Shown piece by piece: positions 5,638 to 12,888 of a stretch of 64,000 nucleotides of DNA. This DNA comes from Haliotis cracherodii. Lineage: Eukaryota. The notes under the pieces were generated by a model. That model searched no databases, had not been told where the DNA came from, and was given only the letters and a program-made list of their open reading frames with translations. Location of the stretch: assembly GCF_022045235.1 (NCBI RefSeq), contig NW_027266341.1, forward strand, positions 6,138,001 to 6,202,000, written 5' to 3'. Positions within the stretch are counted from its first letter, which is position 1, and every line of letters starts with the position of its first letter. A program made the translations under genes and the position numbers.

Positions 5638-7383
5638 ATCTGGAAGCATTCCTGTGACCATCGAGACAAAAGGCGGATATACTAGTATATAATGACGTGG
5701 GGTACTGTGGAGAATCTGGTCACCGTCAAGATCACTGCATTCACACTCCAGAAATCATCATTAACGGACCAGGACAATATTATTGGCAATTCTGTTAAAA
5801 AGGTAAGAAGTGAACACGTAATCGACATTGAGACTCTTCAAGCAAAGTGAGAAAGTTATGACACGGAGCAACTACAAAAATCATTCGATTAGCGTATTGT
5901 TGGCATTGAGCACTCGTTTACATATAAACTTATTGAAAAGATCGAGCTAATTCGAAATGAGGCTAACTGTGTAAAATTGGATGTTTTGAAAGAAGGTGAA
6001 ACGCTGAGTGGTCGGGTCACGCCCCAGAGAGGAGGGGTGTACCTGAGCAACTTAACATTGCTATAAGAAATGTATACGGGTCCGAGAACAAAAACTAATG
6101 ATTTTACCTGTGTATCTCATAAAGGGTCCTCTGTGCTGCCTTACGAATAATTCGATTCATTTAGTAATTTTAAATTTATCCAATCTGGTGCTTTGCAACA
6201 GAAGGCGAGTTGTGTGGGTGCTATCGATTGGAAGCAGCTGTTGACTCTGGACAGTCTCTCCTTCAGTGGGGTGTCTGTCAGCAGAAGGCCATCCAGGAGA
6301 ACATTTAATATGATAGTAAACCACTGTATCGTACTGTATAGGATTACAAGTCTACTCCACAAGACTCCCTCATGTCAGATGATTTATCTGTCAGCTTCGG
6401 GGAGTGATATATAGGTGTGAGGAGGTCTCCGTGCATCAAGCACAGGTTTAAGATTCATATGACAGCCCTGTGAATATCTTTAAAATTGAAAGGAAGAACA
6501 AACTGTCGAGTGAACTTATCCCCCTTGAGGGTAGGTCTAATAATTAAGACATAGGATTAGTAAACAAAGAAGGGCAGATGAACTGACGCTGTTATGGACT
6601 GACAAGAGTACAGCTGAACAGAAATGGTGTCGAAATTAAGGGAAGTATAAAAGTGATTCAGTTTTAAAACAAGACTTTGTAATGAAGTGGAAATTGTTTG
6701 ACAAAGGGGACAATGTCAGGGAGGAACAGAAAACATTATATGACATTTGAGAGTCGGATAGAACTGCGTTTTTGAGAAAGGTTGGGAAGTTTGGTATTGA
6801 AAAAGATGGGAGAAAAAACATTCCAATGGAAATTCCATTGGAGGAAATTTCTGCATCAAGGGACCCTGAGGTTGTTTTAAACACTCGGAAATCTACATTT
6901 TGTGACCTTTTAAACTGTTCTACCAAAGCAGCTGAAGATTCGATATACAAGGAGAGCATCTTCAAAAGATTGTTTAACCAAAGCGAACTCAATGAAGCTC
7001 TTATCCTTGCCAAAGACGGAAAGAAACCAGGAGGGGATGGTATCCCCGTAGAGCGATTCTGAAGAGACCACATCCGTAGTTTTTCATTGACCTCATTAAT
7101 AAATGCTTTAGGACTTGTGTTATACTCAGAGATTAGGGCCAATGAATTATAAACCACATATTCAAATCAGCCATGTCAGAGGGACCCGCTATCCTCCAGA
7201 ATATATTCAAGCATATATAAGCTATATCGTTGCTTGCTAAAAGACTGTATGAGTGTCTGAAGCTGTCTGAAGCTTCTAACTGTATCAATGGCGAACAGAA
7301 TTAATGCAGGAAAATGTTAAGAGAAACAAGGAAAACACAAGAAGAAAACATTTGAAGCTTTCATTGACTTCAAGAAGGCATAT
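5638..7383 (+). mobile_element. Decayed non-LTR retrotransposon (LINE) endonuclease-RT region, interrupted at RT motif
   Basis: ELNEALILAKDGKKPGGDGIPVE (KAPG-DG motif preceding RT) in ORF 6772-7062; TTTGAAGCTTTCATTGACTTCAAGAAGGCATAT = FEAFIDFKKAY at 7351-7383, then abrupt break. Confidence 0.8.
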
Positions 7384-7719
7384 GTGACCTGTTCCATAAA
7401 AAGGGACCAAAAGTCGTCGACTATAAAAACAAGTTACGCATATTTTGCATATTTTCAATTCAAAATAGTATCAAAGACAACTTTAAAATTTAAACTATTT
7501 CAAAAGATCAAGAGAATTTTAAGTTCATATTTAGGCCTGTGGTTCAACAAGTGATTCTTTTGTACCATATCATCGTTAATCCTTTGCTTTTACACACATC
7601 TAGATGAATGCTTGAGGTTTATATTCATGCATTTTACTTTTTATGTCAACAATTATCTAAGATATTTTGTTTGCCGTAGACATGTGACCCATTTTCCTGC
7701 ACGAGAAGTAAAAGGAAAC

Positions 7720-8338
7720 ACGAAGTTGGATGGGTTTGTTTATTCATAAAGAACACAAGATGTCTTGAAACAAGATTATAAACACCAACTAATTTTTATT
7801 TCCTGGTGAGGAACACAATGTTAGGTTAATACCAGTCCGAATTAAAGTTTCTTAATCATACATTCCATGTAAATCTTTCAAAACTTCAGGACAACACAAT
7901 GTTGTTGGATAATGTTACATTTGACAAACCAATACAACAAACAAATAACCTGAAATTATTTTTTGTGACAAACAGTCTTGTCAAAGTAAATGTAACCTAT
8001 AAAAAGACGAAGTTTGATGTTTCGTTTTATTAATAAAAAGACAACAAGATATCTTGAAACAAGATTATGTAAACCCTAAATCCTTTGTTCCTTGGTGAAG
8101 AACACAATGACAGACCGAAATTGTTGTCCAATTTAACACACAAAAATCTTTGACGTGAAATTTGGTCATATCATGACATCATCTAAACCAAGTTTCTTAA
8201 GAATACATTCTGTGTAATTCTTTCCAAATTTTAAGAACACTCATTTTGTAGGATAATGTTACTTTTGACATACTGATACAACAAGCATATAACCTAAAAT
8301 TAAATTTTGTGACAAATAGTCATGTCAAAGTAAACATA
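7720..8338 (+). repeat. Diverged ~290-330 bp tandem duplication in the Sola subterminal region
   Basis: ACAAGAT(G/A)TCTTGAAACAAGATTAT at ~7755 and ~8044; TGGTGA(G/A)GAACACAATG at ~7803 and ~8092; TGTGACAAA(C/T)AGTC..GTCAAAGTAAA at ~7964 and ~8308. Confidence 0.85.
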
Positions 8339-8439
8339 GCCTCTACGCTATCAGCGAAAGGCACTTAAACACTTGCTGTGATGGATTCTGGATTCAGTAG
8401 GTACGACCATTGTCGTCACTTTCAACTTCAGTGTCAGTG

Positions 8440-10534
8440 TCAACCTTTCTCTTAGGACAGTGAATGTGACCTTGTATGACCATGTTCCTGTGTCCAGACT
8501 CGTCACGTAGGTCGTTTACGTGTTAGTTTTCGGAGCTCTAGGTCATCATGACCAAGTTCAGACTCATGACTAGAACTTGGCTCGTCTGCATCAGGCGGAA
8601 CTACTGCTGGATTGGGCACAGTACATCTCTTGATTCCGGCTTGCAAAAGTGTCTGATCTTATTGTATAGGTACAATACTTCAAAACTTGAAATCTAGATC
8701 CAGGATCACTCAGATTCAACTTACAAGTGACATCGCATGGTCTGTCTGTCTCAACTTCAAAATAATGGAAGGTTCTGAGATTTGGCATCTTCCTGAAACC
8801 AATATCACTGAACAGCTTTTGCCAGTCAAAAGTTGGAACAACTGTGGATTCATCTTGTCTCATCACAGTCTGGGGGACATTCACTCTGGATTTAAGACCT
8901 GAGTTGTACATACACGTTTCAACATCGGCTATTGTGTGAACTTCAGACCTTCTGAATCTGGACTTGAATATTCCAAAAGCCCAGTCTGGGCTAAATTTAG
9001 TGTGACCCACAGACAAACAACAGAGTTGTACCCTTTTATGCAGATTATTTGCAACTCTCCATAAGAAGTAGCCTATAAGTTATTTTTGTTTTGTCCTGTG
9101 CAATTGTCCATGTGGAAAATGGCACTGGTTTCTCCAAGCCCATAGTTAGCCAAGTATAAGTGTAACATGCTTATGACTGCGTTTGAACCCTTTCCTGCCA
9201 CAGCACTCTCTGGAATGATGAAATTCACTTGCTTGCTGGTAGCTTCACACATAACGCCAAAAATCCCAACTTAATCGGGGGTCAGAAAATAGATTGGCTC
9301 TGGCTGCTGCAAATTGTGAGGGATGTGTACTTACTGGGGAAAAGTCAAAGCTGTAATGCATTTCTCCTTCAAAGGAATTAGGCTGGTGAGGCTCTAATCT
9401 AGGTGCAAGGTGTGACAGCAAGTTTTCTTTGCTGGTCTGTATTTTCTCTTTAGAGAACTGCCTCTCGGTATGCACGTGTTGCAGATGTCTTAGGGATTCC
9501 TGCAGAAGATCAGTCTTTAGTTTCTCAGACATTGCTGCCATTTTACTGAGGTTCACAATATTGCTTTGGCAAACATAGCAAAGATCCGATCTTGGGCGCT
9601 ATATAACCAGATATGAAAAAACATCCTTCCAAATCCGTCTGAAAGTACTGAGAGATACTGTAGGTGTGTCATCGGGGCTGCTTTCCAGATAAAGTCTATG
9701 GAGTTCTGACTTACTGAGACATGATGGCAGAAGCTTAACATCAGGCGATTTAAAACCCGGAACTCGTCCAGGAAGTACAAGGGTGTGTTGTTCAGCGTAA
9801 TTTTGCAACCAGACTGTCACAAGCTTGATAGACTCTGGATTCACCCTTTTAAACTTGGGCGCTTTCCCAACATTGCCATGTTGTCTGATACATAAGCTGC
9901 CATCCCGTACACTTTTCTTGAGACGACTGTAGCGCTTCCGTCCAATAGCATGAGCAAAACAAAATGTTTTCAGACATATTGGCCTTCCTTGGAAAAGAAA
10001 AGCAGCTCTTGTGTTCTGTCTGTCTTTGTTTTTCTTCTTTGAGCGACATGTCTTTGGGGAATGTTGTGTAAACCCATGAATCAGAGTTACCAAAGTTTCA
10101 TTGAGGACATTGACATGATCCTCATTATAATAATCTTTCTCAAAACTGGCCAACCTATTGTTAATTAGACTCTCTTCAGAAAACTGCTAAGAGCACTGAG
10201 TTGCACTGTCACCATGGTTGCATCCACAACCCTTGGTAAGAAAAGGCTTAACTGCCACCAAGTCATCATCACATAGAAGCTCCTGGTTGTTTTCCGATGC
10301 CTTCCATTGAGTGCCTACATTGATAATCTCCTTTTTAGTATTATCCACAGTATTATAATCTGTATCCCCATCTTCTTCAGAACTGTCAGATGTATCGTCC
10401 TGACCTCCATCCCCACAATCCAGGATGTCGTCATCCACATTAAAGTAGTCCTCAAGAGCAAAGGCAATATCACAGTTACTTACAGAAATATCCCTGAAAC
10501 TGTTCAGTTTGTCAGCAATGTTGGAAGCACTCAT
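8440..10534 (-). pseudogene. Sola-type DDD transposase pseudogene (~650-690 aa reconstructed)
   Basis: ORFs 10187-10534, 9599-10153, 9245-9556 are in one frame separated by single TAG stops. Motifs: RSDLCYVC, HYSFDF, (after frameshift) VHIPHNLQQPEPIYFLTP, GKGSNAVISMLH, HMDNCTGQNK, VGHTKFSPDWAFG, C-terminal YLYNKIRHFCKPESRDVLCP; matches my recollection of Sola/DUF7869-like RNase H-fold transposases. Confidence 0.8.
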
Positions 10535-10543
10535 AATTCTCTA

Positions 10544-12317
10544 CTACAGGTAGTGATTGTAGAGCCGACCAGGGAACTCAGCTGAATGCACAACAAATGA
10601 CACCTTGTGTGAAAACAGCACCCTTAGATGCATGTATTGTTCAATGTATTCATCATCTGCCAAGGAAAAACGAAAACGCACCATGAACCTGTCTTTTGCA
10701 AGAATAGTGGCAATCTGGTAGAGTTCTGAAAATGTAAACTTACATCCTGACACATCAACATCTGAAAGAACACACTTCCTGGCAATTTCACACAAAACAT
10801 CACACGTCATGTGAGTAAATGCAGCATGAAGTGTCTCCAGTTTAGGCAATAATGACAGCCATAGTAATTCATCTGACGCCACACCCATACAAATGTCTAG
10901 CAGCACCAGTTGCAAGTTTTGTAGCGGTTGAAGGAAGGCTAATTTGCTAATACCTTATCCATTAATGCTCTAGTGTTCGTAAGGCATGATTAGGGCTGCA
11001 ACGATACAGGAATTTCACGATACGATAGGCATCTCGATATCCTGGTAACGATACGATACGTATCTCGATACGCAATGATATAAAAAAACAAGACTGAAAG
11101 CATGTCAAAATTGAACCTTTCATGATTTTGGAACAGTCAAAATTATTTTATAATAACAAGACTACTGAAGTTAAGCTTCAAAGTGGAACTTTACCTAACT
11201 TTCCTTCAAATGGTCGAAGGATTTATATCTGAAATTATTGTTTTATCAGGAGTAATATATTCCAATATCTTGTTACTTTAGCTGCAACTTTTACTATATA
11301 TATATATTTAAAGTTATAAGAACCACAAACGTAGCATTTTGGTACTGGTGATTGCATGATATTTTTACGTATGGAACAATTTGACCGTAGGGACTTCCCG
11401 CGCAACATGTATGTATGCGAAAACGCTATATTGACATATATTAGCCAAATTGCCAGAAATATGACTTGTAACGAGTCAAAGTGTGGCATTTTTAATATAT
11501 GTATCCATTCTCTAGTAACTAAAGTTTGCTTCAATGCGTCAAAAGCGGTAATCTGCCCGCGGTTGCTCTATCTCTTCACACACGATTTCACCTAACTTAA
11601 TGAAAACAATATTAAATGAAATTTTGAATAAAATTGATAAAATATATTACAAACACAAATCCAGATATACAACGAACACTTTTTAATAACAAGATGGTAT
11701 AATAATGGTATTGAATTGCGAACTTCAATTCGGATTTGCTAACTGGTATTTCCAGTGTTATGTGCTTGCTGATCAGCTGATAATGTTTTTTATGAGATGG
11801 GGAAAAACATCTGTCGGTGTAAAACCTGAGCTTATTAAAAATGTAAATACGGTTTTGGGAGCCATGCGTTACCGCGCGCTACAACCAAGTTAGCGGTTTA
11901 TTGAAAGGCACAAATGCGAGGAAACGCTGAGATTTGCGTTCCGTATCGTGGAGTATCAATAAATGTTCCCACGTCTATCGTATAAAGTATCATGGGTCAA
12001 GTATCACGATGCATCGGAATATCAGTGTATCGTTTCACCCTCAAGCATGATTGGAACAGATTATCAGTGTCATCAGTTGTGTATCTTTGAGCACCTTCAC
12101 TGAACATTAATGTTCTAAATGCTACTGAGTGGCTCAAAATTCTTTAAAGTGTTGATGTATCTACTTTGAGTTCACCAGGCCAATTGCAGTATCTCCATAA
12201 AATGTGATTGGTATTCTATTTCTTGCTGACATAGGACACTGTTGTGACCAGCGTTTGAATGTCCAAACATTTGAGTATGCGTATAAGTACTGCTTCTGGC
12301 AAATCCAATAGATTCAT
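10544..12317 (-). pseudogene. F-box / leucine-rich-repeat protein pseudogene (cargo of the transposon), split by MITE 10991-12043
   Basis: From ATG 12317: MNLLDLPEAVLIRILKCLDIQTLVTTVSYVSKK*NTNHILWR = F-box consensus (L..LP..L..I...L.....V.K.W....LW; TGG>TAG). After removing the MITE and one frameshift: GISKLAFLQPLQNLQLVLLDIC..LSLLPKLETLHAAFT..VLCEIARKCVLSDVDVSGC = Cys-containing LRR-like repeats; stop 10544. Confidence 0.8.
10991..12043. mobile_element. Non-autonomous hAT-type element (MITE)
   Basis: TIRs TAGGGCTGCAACGATAC ... GTATCGTTTCACCCT(C)A; 8-bp TSD GGCATGAT / AGCATGAT; CGATA/TATCG subterminal repeats at both ends; no ORF. Confidence 0.85.
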
Positions 12318-12697
12318 CTGTAAAATAATTAAAGAACAATCGTATCTGGCTGGAACTTGGAACTAATGCCTCTTATAAGGCACGAACACAAAAGTTAAAG
12401 TTATTTCCCTTGCCGACATGTGATCCATTTAGCTTGAGCTTAATGTAATTACAATATAAACGAAAATGAAGCAGTTATATAATATTTCTCATGGGAGTGA
12501 AAATATTATTTGCAATTACATCTTAGTATCAATAATCATCACTCTAACATTCGTGAAATAACAGTGTAAAGTCGTTTATGTGTAATGGACATCTGGCTCC
12601 TTTTATTATGTGTAACATACTCTAAAACCGACTTGTGGTCCGTTTTTATGTTTAGCGTAGAATGACAGTTTTACCGACTTGTGGTACCTCTTTGTTT

Positions 12698-12888
12698 GTA
12701 TGCTTGTCGTAAAAGGCGACTAACGGAATCGGGTGGTCAGGTTCTCTGACTTGGTGGATCGATGCTCATGATATTAATCACTGGATTGTCTGGTCCAGAT
12801 TCGATTCGATTTACAGACCGCCGTCATGTAGCTGGAATATTGCTGAGTGCGGCGTAAAACAACAAACCTACCAACCAACAACCAACAT
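12698..12888 (+). mobile_element. SINE-like family C, 5'-truncated
   Basis: ATGCTTGTCGTAAAAGGCGACTAACGG..CTGGATTGTCTGGTCCAGA..GCTGGAATATTGCTGAGTGCGGCGTAAAAC + (AAAC/AACC)n. Confidence 0.85.

What the first reader, a model, noticed from the sequence alone, without database searches (positions are those of the whole stretch)
7384..12695. Sola-type DNA transposon carrying an F-box/LRR (SCF ubiquitin-ligase adaptor) cargo gene
Seen: between inverted terminal motifs lie two co-oriented, intronless coding regions, an F-box plus LRR-like protein (12317-10544, missed by the ORF track because of stops and a MITE) followed by a DDD transposase (10534-~8440). Established: F-box/LRR proteins are substrate adaptors of SCF (Skp1-Cul1) E3 ligases; Sola elements are normally described as single-ORF. 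Inference: this family may encode its own ubiquitin-ligase adaptor, e.g. to degrade a host silencing/restriction factor or to tune transposase levels, analogous to viral F-box suppressors and plant VANDAL anti-silencing cargo. I know of no description of this pairing but cannot search the literature. This copy is dead.
Basis: partly seen in the sequence, partly recalled or inferred. Interest (0 to 1): 0.85.

Follow-up and report, generated by a model that had tools for sequence, protein, structure and literature searches.

The report
Abalone transposons carrying an F-box gene
The window holds a dead copy of a cut-and-paste transposon whose family, like at least two other distantly related families in this abalone genome, carries its own F-box/leucine-rich-repeat gene directly in front of the transposase, so these jumping genes probably bring their own adaptor for the host's ubiquitin-tagging machinery.

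Summary
On the minus strand an F-box/LRR reading frame (12317-10544) is broken by stops and a 1,053-bp hAT-like MITE. It is followed 9 nt later by a decayed DDD transposase (10534-~8397, Pfam DUF7869), and the element ends at a true terminal inverted repeat (TIR) at 7384. The right-hand "terminal motif" is only a subterminal repeat, because this copy has lost about 565 bp of its 5' end.

The pairing is not a one-off. Every copy of this family that reaches upstream of the transposase keeps the F-box/LRR frame. A second family (contig C6, with a 97% copy on C1) and a third (C7) have both frames open. Three further pairs are decayed or only partly open.

The second family has 37-bp TIRs and an AATT target-site duplication (TSD) backed by empty sites. 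Its transposase exon has no ATG of its own.

The two families' transposases sit in deeply separate clades (23% identity), yet their F-box/LRR proteins are 31% identical. That points to module exchange or repeated capture.

No transposase relative outside this genome showed an F-box. SCF function is inferred. I found no description of a Sola/F-box-LRR pairing.

The parts
7380..7383 (.). ATAT flank at the 3' end of the element. It is the putative 4-bp target-site duplication; the other half is lost with the 5' end.
   Evidence: Every end of this family is flanked by ATAT in L031, L033, L034, L046 and the window.
7384..7416 (-). 3' terminal inverted repeat, about 33 bp, beginning GTGACCTGTTCC.
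   Evidence: It is the only match to the TIR pattern in the 64-kb window. It matches both ends of the complete copy L031.
7417..8396 (-). 3' non-coding part of the element, with internally repeated segments.
   Evidence: It aligns to the 3' parts of the C45, C7 and C34 copies, with extra internal matches.
8397..10534 (-). Decayed DDD transposase (Pfam DUF7869 type). It survives as open pieces at 10534-10187, 10153-9599, 9556-9245, 9252-9073 and 9016-8591.
   Evidence: ORF list; weak DUF7869 hits on the window's pieces; 48.9 bits on the 372-aa open frame of copy L031; tblastn map.
10535..10546 (-). Junction TAG TAG AGA ATT between the F-box/LRR stop and the transposase ATG. The two frames are in the same frame here.
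   Evidence: Sequence; junction conserved across copies with an AG nearby.
10544..10991 (-). C-terminal (LRR) part of the F-box/LRR frame.
   Evidence: 92% identical to the 143-aa open frame of copy C8, with one TAA; alignment A1.
10992..12044 (.). Nested 1,053-bp hAT-like MITE, with 8-bp duplications GCATGATT at 10984-10991 and 12045-12052.
   Evidence: At least 40 copies at 83-89% identity; ends and duplication read directly, with the uninterrupted site in L031; absent from the C8 and C45 copies.
12045..12317 (-). N-terminal part of the F-box/LRR frame. The ATG is at 12317-12315, the F-box domain at about 12311-12222, and there are two in-frame stops.
   Evidence: PF00646 21.5 bits on the 32 residues before the first stop. 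The intact 161-aa version in L031 scores 32.8 bits on PF12937 and 27 bits on PF00646.
12318..12337 (-). Pyrimidine-rich stretch ending in CAG directly before the F-box ATG. It is a candidate 3' splice acceptor.
   Evidence: Conserved in six copies, including the diverged L035, while the sequence further upstream differs.
12338..12697 (-). Remaining 5' internal region, with subterminal repeats of the TIR core at about 12628-12650 and 12674-12697. Homology to other copies ends at about 12697, which is the 5' truncation point.
   Evidence: Inverted-repeat pair I3; motif scan finds 3 of the window's 4 occurrences in this element; copy alignments start at query 204, which is window 12697.

Best explanation
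The window holds a dead, 5'-truncated, MITE-interrupted copy of a Sola-like cut-and-paste transposon. It has a DDD transposase of Pfam type DUF7869 and 4-bp AT-rich target duplications. Its family carries, inside its TIRs and directly upstream of the transposase, a roughly 240-residue gene for an N-terminal F-box followed by about five cysteine-type leucine-rich repeats, a minimal FBXL/Skp2-like layout.

The same two-gene layout occurs in at least two further, very distant transposon families of this abalone genome with both frames open, and in three more decayed or partly open pairs. The gene is therefore a maintained accessory gene and not a chance passenger.

In the intact family on contig C6 the sequence suggests a single transcription unit:
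- a short ATG-bearing acidic first exon;
- one GTAAGT donor;
- two alternative acceptors, the proximal one giving the F-box/LRR protein and the distal one giving the transposase.

Inferred mechanism: the F-box binds host Skp1, so that a host Skp1-Cul1 ligase ubiquitinates whatever the LRR part binds. That target is most likely a host protein that limits transposition, rather than the element's own transposase, because the module is shared by transposase lineages that are only 23% identical.

Shown: anatomy, boundaries, domain identity, recurrence and open frames. Inferred: splicing, Skp1 binding and the target.
For: Domains:
- F-box is above Pfam cut-offs in both families: 32.8 and 27 bits, 38.8 and 23.7 bits.
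- A profile of the proteins hits SKP2 across the F-box and LRR region at E 9e-5.
- The nearest ESM-Atlas clusters are F-box/FBXL15/FBXL18 at 0.95-0.96.
- The transposase is DUF7869 with invariant D317, D393 and D435.

Inside the element:
- L031 has both TIRs around both genes.
- L041 has 37-bp TIRs and AATT on both sides. At least 7 paralogous empty sites overlap by 4-5 nt.

Recurrence:
- The window's family keeps the pair in the window, C8, C45, C31, C7:3.12M, C10 and C7:14.65M copies.
- Other families: C6 and C1 (open frames of 234/229 aa and 626 aa), C7:3.52M (235 and 681 aa open), C32, C29 and C34.

Constraint:
- dN/dS is 0.68 (0.56-0.80) for F-box/LRR against 0.53 for the transposase among decayed copies.

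Splicing model:
- Exon 1 ATG plus GTAAGT donor, and an acceptor exactly at the start of F-box homology.
- A second acceptor 7 nt after the F-box stop, opening a transposase frame with no ATG before its conserved cysteine motif.
- Exon 1 carries the DPNYE motif seen at the N-terminus of related single-frame transposases.
- Acceptor and donor are conserved in the window's family.

Module sharing:
- Transposases are 23% identical (E 5e-5) while F-box/LRR proteins are 31% identical (E 3e-25).
- The two transposases fall in two clades separated by branches of about 3 changes per site, support 100.
Against:
- The structure model is unusable at pLDDT 44.
- The LRR Pfam hit is just under its cut-off: 26.0 against 27 bits.
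- Constraint on the F-box/LRR frame is weak. Its in-frame dN/dS of 0.68 is barely below one shifted-frame control at 0.78.
- Between the two young C6 and C1 copies the F-box/LRR frame is 94% identical in protein and 95% in DNA, against 98% and 98% for the transposase.
- The window, C34 and C78b copies share the MITE inside the F-box frame yet sit at different sites. Elements with a broken F-box gene were therefore still mobilised.
- No relative outside this genome shows the gene: 296 transposase homologues and 80 metagenomic loci carry no F-box.
- Two protein searches with the F-box/LRR proteins found nothing.
Confidence: 0.6

Rival explanations
1. Autoregulation. The F-box/LRR protein targets the element's own transposase or the post-transposition complex for ubiquitination. 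This would either limit transposase dosage or help dismantle the stable strand-transfer complex. Making both proteins from one pre-mRNA would set their ratio.
For: The two frames are tightly coupled and abut in three families. In the C6 family both proteins would share the 44-residue first exon.
Against: The same module type serves transposases that are only 23% identical and lie in separate deep clades. A transposase-recognising LRR would have to re-adapt each time. Most relatives of these transposases do without the gene.
Confidence: 0.15
2. Functionless passenger. A host F-box/LRR gene, or a retrocopy of one, was picked up and is merely carried along. Open frames are seen only because some copies are young.
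For: Constraint is weak and change between the young copies is faster than in the transposase. Copies with a MITE-broken frame still moved. No homologues were found outside this genome.
Against: Complete frames are kept at about 30% identity across at least three families with open frames. The frame always sits directly before the transposase exon with matching splice-like signals. In-frame dN/dS is below 1, with a bootstrap upper bound of 0.80. The 15-nt difference between the C6 and C1 copies preserves the frame. No host gene with higher similarity appeared in the genome search.
Confidence: 0.17
3. Fusion protein. The F-box/LRR part is really the N-terminal domain of the transposase, joined by splicing or stop read-through. 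This would resemble the F-box-bearing transposase isoform reported for Zisupton.
For: There is a Zisupton precedent (PMC12062965).
Against: A tandem stop makes read-through unlikely. In the C6 family the frames differ by one base and only 7 nt separate the stop from the acceptor, with no room for an intron. In the window's family the transposase has its own ATG.
Confidence: 0.06

Closest known systems
Sola superfamily DNA transposons, especially Sola2 elements that carry a second gene (Fanzor1) in amoebozoa (PMC3627910; general description in PMC10741241)
   Same: DDD transposase, TIRs, 4-bp AT-rich palindromic target duplications (AWWT, ATAT), and precedent for an extra captured gene inside the element. 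By eye the motif order matches the Sola2 protein printed in that paper's supplement: D-x-C-x2-C, then D, then DN..K.N, then H...D..F.
   Different: The extra gene here is an F-box/LRR protein rather than a TnpB-like nuclease. It sits upstream of and abuts the transposase exon, and it is shared by distant transposase clades within one animal genome.
Zisupton transposon of platyfish, one isoform of which includes an F-box domain (Bohne et al. 2012, as cited in PMC12062965)
   Same: A DNA transposon whose products include an F-box, apparently through alternative transcript forms.
   Different: It belongs to a different superfamily (KDZ, 8-bp duplications). There the F-box is part of a transposase isoform; here it is a separate small F-box/LRR protein.
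Viral F-box proteins that hijack host SCF ligases, such as polerovirus P0 against AGO1, nanovirus Clink and poxvirus ankyrin/PRANC proteins (from my own knowledge, not checked here)
   Same: A selfish genetic element brings its own substrate receptor for the host Skp1-Cul1 ligase. The substrate-binding part evolves fast.
   Different: Those are viruses with shown targets. Here the carrier is a cut-and-paste transposon and no target is known.
SKP2 / FBXL-type host F-box proteins
   Same: An N-terminal F-box followed by cysteine-type LRRs. SKP2 is the best solved-structure match at E 9e-5.
   Different: The protein is much shorter (about 235-240 residues, about five repeats), sits on a single exon, is encoded inside a transposon, and has no detectable orthologue in the protein databases.
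Accessory genes and alternative splicing in plant transposons: VANDAL VANC anti-silencing factors and En/Spm TnpA/TnpD made from one pre-mRNA (own knowledge). Also ubiquitin-pathway domains such as OTU, UCH, Ulp1 and FBA_3 captured by Helitron-like elements (PMC11417382)
   Same: Transposons that keep a non-transposase gene, in some cases expressed by alternative splicing. Ubiquitin-system parts are picked up repeatedly.
   Different: The superfamily, host phylum and protein type all differ. F-box plus LRR in a Sola-like element was not found in the searched literature.

Membership tests
Sola superfamily | DDD catalytic triad in an RNase H-like transposase | tested here: met
   Three invariant aspartates (D317, D393, D435 of the C6 transposase) in a 13-sequence alignment. 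The same motifs are visible in the window's family. Which residue is the third catalytic one is inferred.
Sola superfamily | 4-bp target-site duplication | tested here: met
   In the C6 family, AATT lies on both sides and at least 7 empty-site paralogues overlap by 4-5 nt. In the window's family, ATAT lies at every end, but no empty site was available.
Sola superfamily | Terminal inverted repeats | tested here: met
   A 33-bp TIR in L031, L033 and L034 and at window 7384. A roughly 37-bp TIR in L041.
Sola superfamily | Significant sequence similarity to reference Sola1/2/3 transposases | not testable with these tools
   No transposon protein library was at hand. I only compared motifs by eye with the Sola2 protein in the supplement of PMC3627910. 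The subgroup (Sola1, 2 or 3) is therefore left open.
Pfam DUF7869 (PF25273) | Score above the curated cut-off of 26 bits | tested here: met
   48.9 bits for the window's family copy L031 and 28.2 bits for the C6 family. The window's own broken pieces reach only 13-17 bits.
F-box proteins (SCF substrate receptors) | F-box domain above Pfam cut-offs | tested here: met
   PF12937 scores 32.8 and 38.8 bits against a 24.3 cut-off. PF00646 scores 27, 23.7 and, in the window itself, 21.5 bits against a 20.5 cut-off.
F-box proteins (SCF substrate receptors) | C-terminal LRR substrate-binding domain (FBXL class) | tested here: inconclusive
   LRR_4 scores 26.0 bits against a 27 cut-off. The profile aligns to the SKP2 LRRs and the nearest atlas clusters are FBXL15/18. 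The AlphaFold model is too poor to judge, at pLDDT 44.
F-box proteins (SCF substrate receptors) | Binding to Skp1 and ubiquitination of a substrate | not testable with these tools
No complex prediction was run.
Captured host-gene fragment (Pack-type passenger) | Fragmentary, copy- or subfamily-specific, no maintained frame | tested here: not met
   A complete frame is present in all upstream-reaching copies. It is open in the C6, C1, C7:3.52M, C32 and C15 copies at about 30-34% identity.

The most novel reading that the evidence does not exclude
Abalone Sola-like transposons have passed among themselves a transposon-specific F-box/LRR gene that hijacks the host SCF ligase to destroy a host factor restricting transposition. 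It would be an animal transposon 'counter-defence' gene, produced together with the transposase by a choice between two 3' splice sites on one pre-mRNA.
Probability: 0.3. Interest if true: 0.85.

Novelty: new variant of a known kind. Interest (0 to 1): 0.7.

Why it matters
Accessory genes that let cut-and-paste transposons manipulate their host are well known in plants (VANDAL) and viruses, but are hardly documented in animals. A small, intact, transposon-borne F-box/LRR gene gives a direct handle. Its binding partner would name a host protein that matters for transposon control in a mollusc.

The apparent sharing of one module by transposase lineages that split long ago would show that transposons trade host-interaction genes much as viruses do.

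The two-acceptor gene layout is a compact, testable example of how a eukaryotic transposon could make two proteins from one promoter.

A 2025 survey of F-box/transposon domain co-occurrence states that it found no evidence for capture of F-box domains by transposons (PMC12062965). These elements would be such evidence.

Tried and rejected
No reason such as human likeness was stated.
The C1, C7:3.52M, C32, C29 and C34 elements and an abalone Skp1 could not be fetched. Those elements are known only from coordinates, identities and open-frame lengths, and complex prediction was not run.

**Searches that found nothing or failed**
- Word-based protein searches with both F-box/LRR proteins found nothing.
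- The AlphaFold2 model of the C6 F-box/LRR protein came out at pLDDT 44 and was not used for fold search.
- Two key papers (Bao et al. 2009; Yuan and Wessler 2011) are not held.

**Readings considered and rejected**
- Stop read-through between the two frames is not conserved in the C6 family.
- The lead that these transposases are fused to OTU domains did not hold: OTU hits are abundant but none lies next to the DUF7869 loci listed.

The spliced gene model of the C6 element was never joined. Its exons were searched one by one by reference, and the joined protein was not built or searched.


Full report
**1. What is in the window**

All features lie on the minus strand.

- **Start of the F-box frame.** An ATG at 12317 opens MNLLDLPEAVLIRILKCLD..., a textbook F-box. 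The 32 residues before the first stop already pass the PF00646 cut-off (21.5 against 20.5 bits).
- **Extent of the frame.** It can be followed, through two stops, to 12045. It resumes at 10991 and ends at a TAG at 10546-10544.
- **The gap in the frame.** This is a 1,053-bp element at 10992-12044.
  - It has inverted ends and an 8-bp duplication GCATGATT, so it is hAT-like.
  - It has at least 40 other copies in the genome.
  - It is missing from the C8 and C45 copies of the transposon.
- **Transposase.** Nine bases after the F-box stop (TAG TAG AGA ATT) a transposase frame starts at 10534 and runs to about 8397.
  - It is broken by nonsense mutations and frameshifts.
  - Its core carries the DNC.GQNKN and GHTKFSPD motifs of Pfam DUF7869.
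- **Left end.** The element ends at 7384 with GTGACCTGTTCC..., preceded by ATAT.

**2. Boundaries**

Other copies in the same genome give the true ends. The earlier notes identify the genome as black abalone, which I did not verify.

- The complete copy on C45 (L031) and two internally deleted copies (L033, L034) carry the same 33-bp repeat inverted at both ends, each flanked by ATAT.
- Their 5' repeat lies about 565 bp upstream of the point where the window copy stops matching, at about window 12697.
- That stretch is nowhere in the window.
Three of the window's four occurrences lie in this element.
- The copy is therefore truncated at its 5' end, interrupted by a MITE and riddled with stops.

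**3. Is the F-box gene part of the transposon?**

*Within the window's family.* Every copy that reaches upstream of the transposase has the F-box/LRR frame directly in front of it.

- This holds for the young copies (window, C8, C45).
- It also holds for four old, much more diverged ones: C31, C7:3.12M, C10 and C7:14.65M, at about 50-60% protein identity.
- The only transposase copy without the frame (C7:18.58M) is cut off at the transposase start.

*Beyond the family.* A search with the LRR part turned up a 29-31% identical frame on C6. That locus (L041) proved to be an apparently intact element of a different family.

- It has a 234-codon F-box/LRR exon, followed 7 nt after its stop by a 605-codon transposase exon.
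- PF12937 scores 38.8 bits on the F-box.
- The element has roughly 37-bp TIRs and AATT on both sides.
- It sits inside another repeat whose other copies are uninterrupted. The two flanks overlap by 4-5 nt in at least seven of them, which gives a 4-bp TSD.
- A second copy on C1 is 97% identical, with both frames open.

*Searching the genome with the C6 proteins* found further pairs in the same order and orientation.

| Locus | F-box/LRR frame | Transposase frame |
|---|---|---|
| C7:3.52M | open, 235 aa | open, 681 aa |
| C32:1.107M | open, 218 aa | has stops |
| C29:2.30M | open over a 142-aa partial match | decayed (11 stops) |
| C34:49.24M | has a stop | has stops |

Many other DUF7869 loci in the genome have no F-box nearby.

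**4. What the proteins are**

- **F-box/LRR protein.**
  - A profile of the F-box/LRR proteins (A1) finds SKP2 as the best solved structure at E 9e-5, aligned over both the F-box and the LRR region.
  - Language-model look-alikes are F-box/FBXL15/FBXL18 clusters at 0.95-0.96.
  - LRR_4 scores 26.0 bits, just under its 27-bit cut-off.
  - The structure model was too poor to use, at pLDDT 44.
- **Transposase.**
  - It belongs to a large animal family, with 3,936 hits in the library of cluster representatives.
  - It has three invariant aspartates.
  - Together with TIRs and 4-bp AWWT-type duplications, this fits the published definition of Sola (PMC10741241) and the target preference reported for Sola2 (PMC3627910).
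  - I could not compare it with reference Sola profiles, so the subgroup is left open.

**5. Gene structure (inferred)**

In the C6 element:

- The transposase exon has no ATG before its conserved cysteine motif.
- About 1.1 kb upstream lies a 44-codon acidic exon that starts with ATG and ends in phase 0 at a GTAAGT donor.
- A pyrimidine-rich AG acceptor lies exactly where F-box homology starts.
- A second acceptor lies exactly where the transposase frame becomes conserved, in phase with exon 1.
- Exon 1 carries the DPNYE motif that sits at the N-terminus of related single-frame transposases.

The simplest reading is one pre-mRNA with two alternative acceptors.

In the window's family:

- The acceptor-like ttttacag before the F-box ATG is conserved even in the diverged C31 copy.
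- A GTAAGT donor is conserved in the 5' region that the window copy has lost.
- An AG persists at the F-box/transposase junction.

**6. Selection**

- Among decayed copies of the window's family, in-frame dN/dS is 0.68 (bootstrap 0.56-0.80) for F-box/LRR. Shifted-frame controls give 0.78 and 1.15.
- For the transposase the in-frame value is 0.53, with controls of 0.92 and 0.87.
- Between the C6 and C1 copies, F-box/LRR is 94% identical in protein and 95% in DNA. The DNA figure includes a 15-nt frame-preserving gap. The transposase is 98% identical in both.
- The accessory gene is therefore under weaker constraint than the transposase. The best evidence for constraint is that complete frames stay open at about 30% identity across families.
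- The window, C34 and C78b copies share the MITE at the same site but lie at different loci with their own flanks. Elements with a broken F-box gene were thus still mobilised, so the gene is not needed in cis.

**7. History**

- The transposases of the window's family and the C6 family are 23% identical over 135 residues (E 5e-5).
- They fall into two clades separated by branches of about 3 changes per site (support 100). Each has closer relatives, at 45-47% identity, in moths and a sponge (window's family) or in other insects (C6 family).
- Their F-box/LRR proteins are 31% identical over 155 residues (E 3e-25), although this gene evolves faster within families.
- None of 296 homologous proteins carries an F-box.
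- None of 80 metagenomic loci encoding relatives contains an F-box/LRR frame, and about a dozen of those have more than 1.1 kb upstream.
- The module is therefore younger than the split of the transposases. It was either exchanged between co-resident families or captured more than once from related sources.
- That a single module type serves such different transposases argues that its target is a host protein and not the transposase.

**8. Comparison with the literature**

- Sola2 elements with a second gene (Fanzor1) are described (PMC3627910).
- A Zisupton isoform with an F-box, and F-box genes that captured transposon domains, are described. The same paper says it found no evidence for capture of F-box domains by transposons (PMC12062965).
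- Helitron-like elements pick up OTU, UCH, Ulp1 and F-box-associated domains (PMC11417382).
- Four literature searches found no Sola-type element with an F-box/LRR gene.
- Earlier notes of this scan flagged the same-frame junction on this window and other ubiquitin-related transposon fusions in this genome. The first I confirmed. The OTU lead I could not link to these loci.

**9. Verdict**

- The interpretation that the family encodes its own F-box adaptor is supported at the level of genome anatomy, and extends to several families, some apparently intact.
- The biochemical role is inference.
- This is a new variant of a known kind, namely transposons with host-manipulating accessory genes.
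- There is a clear experimental path through the intact C6 and C1 copies.

Noticed in passing
window 10992-12044: A hAT-like MITE of 1,053 bp with an 8-bp duplication GCATGATT. It has at least 40 copies at 83-89% identity, and many copies lack an internal stretch of about 40 bp. Sequence like window 12699-12867 lies next to several other copies of it.
   Followed up: partly
window 6636-7160: Open frames just left of the element include a PGGDGIP-type motif typical of LINE reverse transcriptases. This is probably a retrotransposon fragment flanking the insertion.
   Followed up: no
G000:C47:23000-147500 and G000:C45:17399000-17426500: Long tandem arrays with a period of about 2.64 kb. Every unit contains the same decayed DUF7869 transposase fragment, 32% identical to the C6 transposase and with identical stops, so this is a satellite built from a transposon piece.
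   Followed up: no
L044 7600-9950 (G000:C7:18623600-18625950): About 28 tandem units of roughly 83 bp derived from the C-terminal cysteine/histidine-rich tail of the window family's transposase.
   Followed up: no
L035 3600-4800 and 5310-6420 (G000:C31): The diverged C31 copy has two minisatellite expansions, one inside the F-box frame and one between the LRR part and the transposase.
   Followed up: no
G000:C4:16427032-16428738, C34:62600021-62601727, C2:44533832-44535472, C13:4367877-4369583: Other DUF7869 transposases, 28-29% identical to the C6 one, lie inside very long open frames of 884-1,662 aa with no F-box nearby. Their extra domains were not examined.
   Followed up: no
many loci, e.g. 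G000:C1:48098510, C11:6760102: OTU deubiquitinase domains sit in multicopy open frames of about 912 aa and about 2,600-2,800 aa. These are probably other transposon families, possibly Helitron-like. None is next to the DUF7869 loci studied here.
   Followed up: partly
protein P0188, residues ~35-85: This related transposase prediction has a hydrophobic stretch between its DPNYE motif and its basic motif. It looks like a translated intron at the position where the abalone C6 element carries its F-box exon.
   Followed up: no
G000:C3:25853105-25854423 and C2:35425703-35427014: The best DUF7869 matches in the genome are split into three collinear pieces with open frames. This suggests an intron-containing, possibly domesticated, gene present in two copies.
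   Followed up: no
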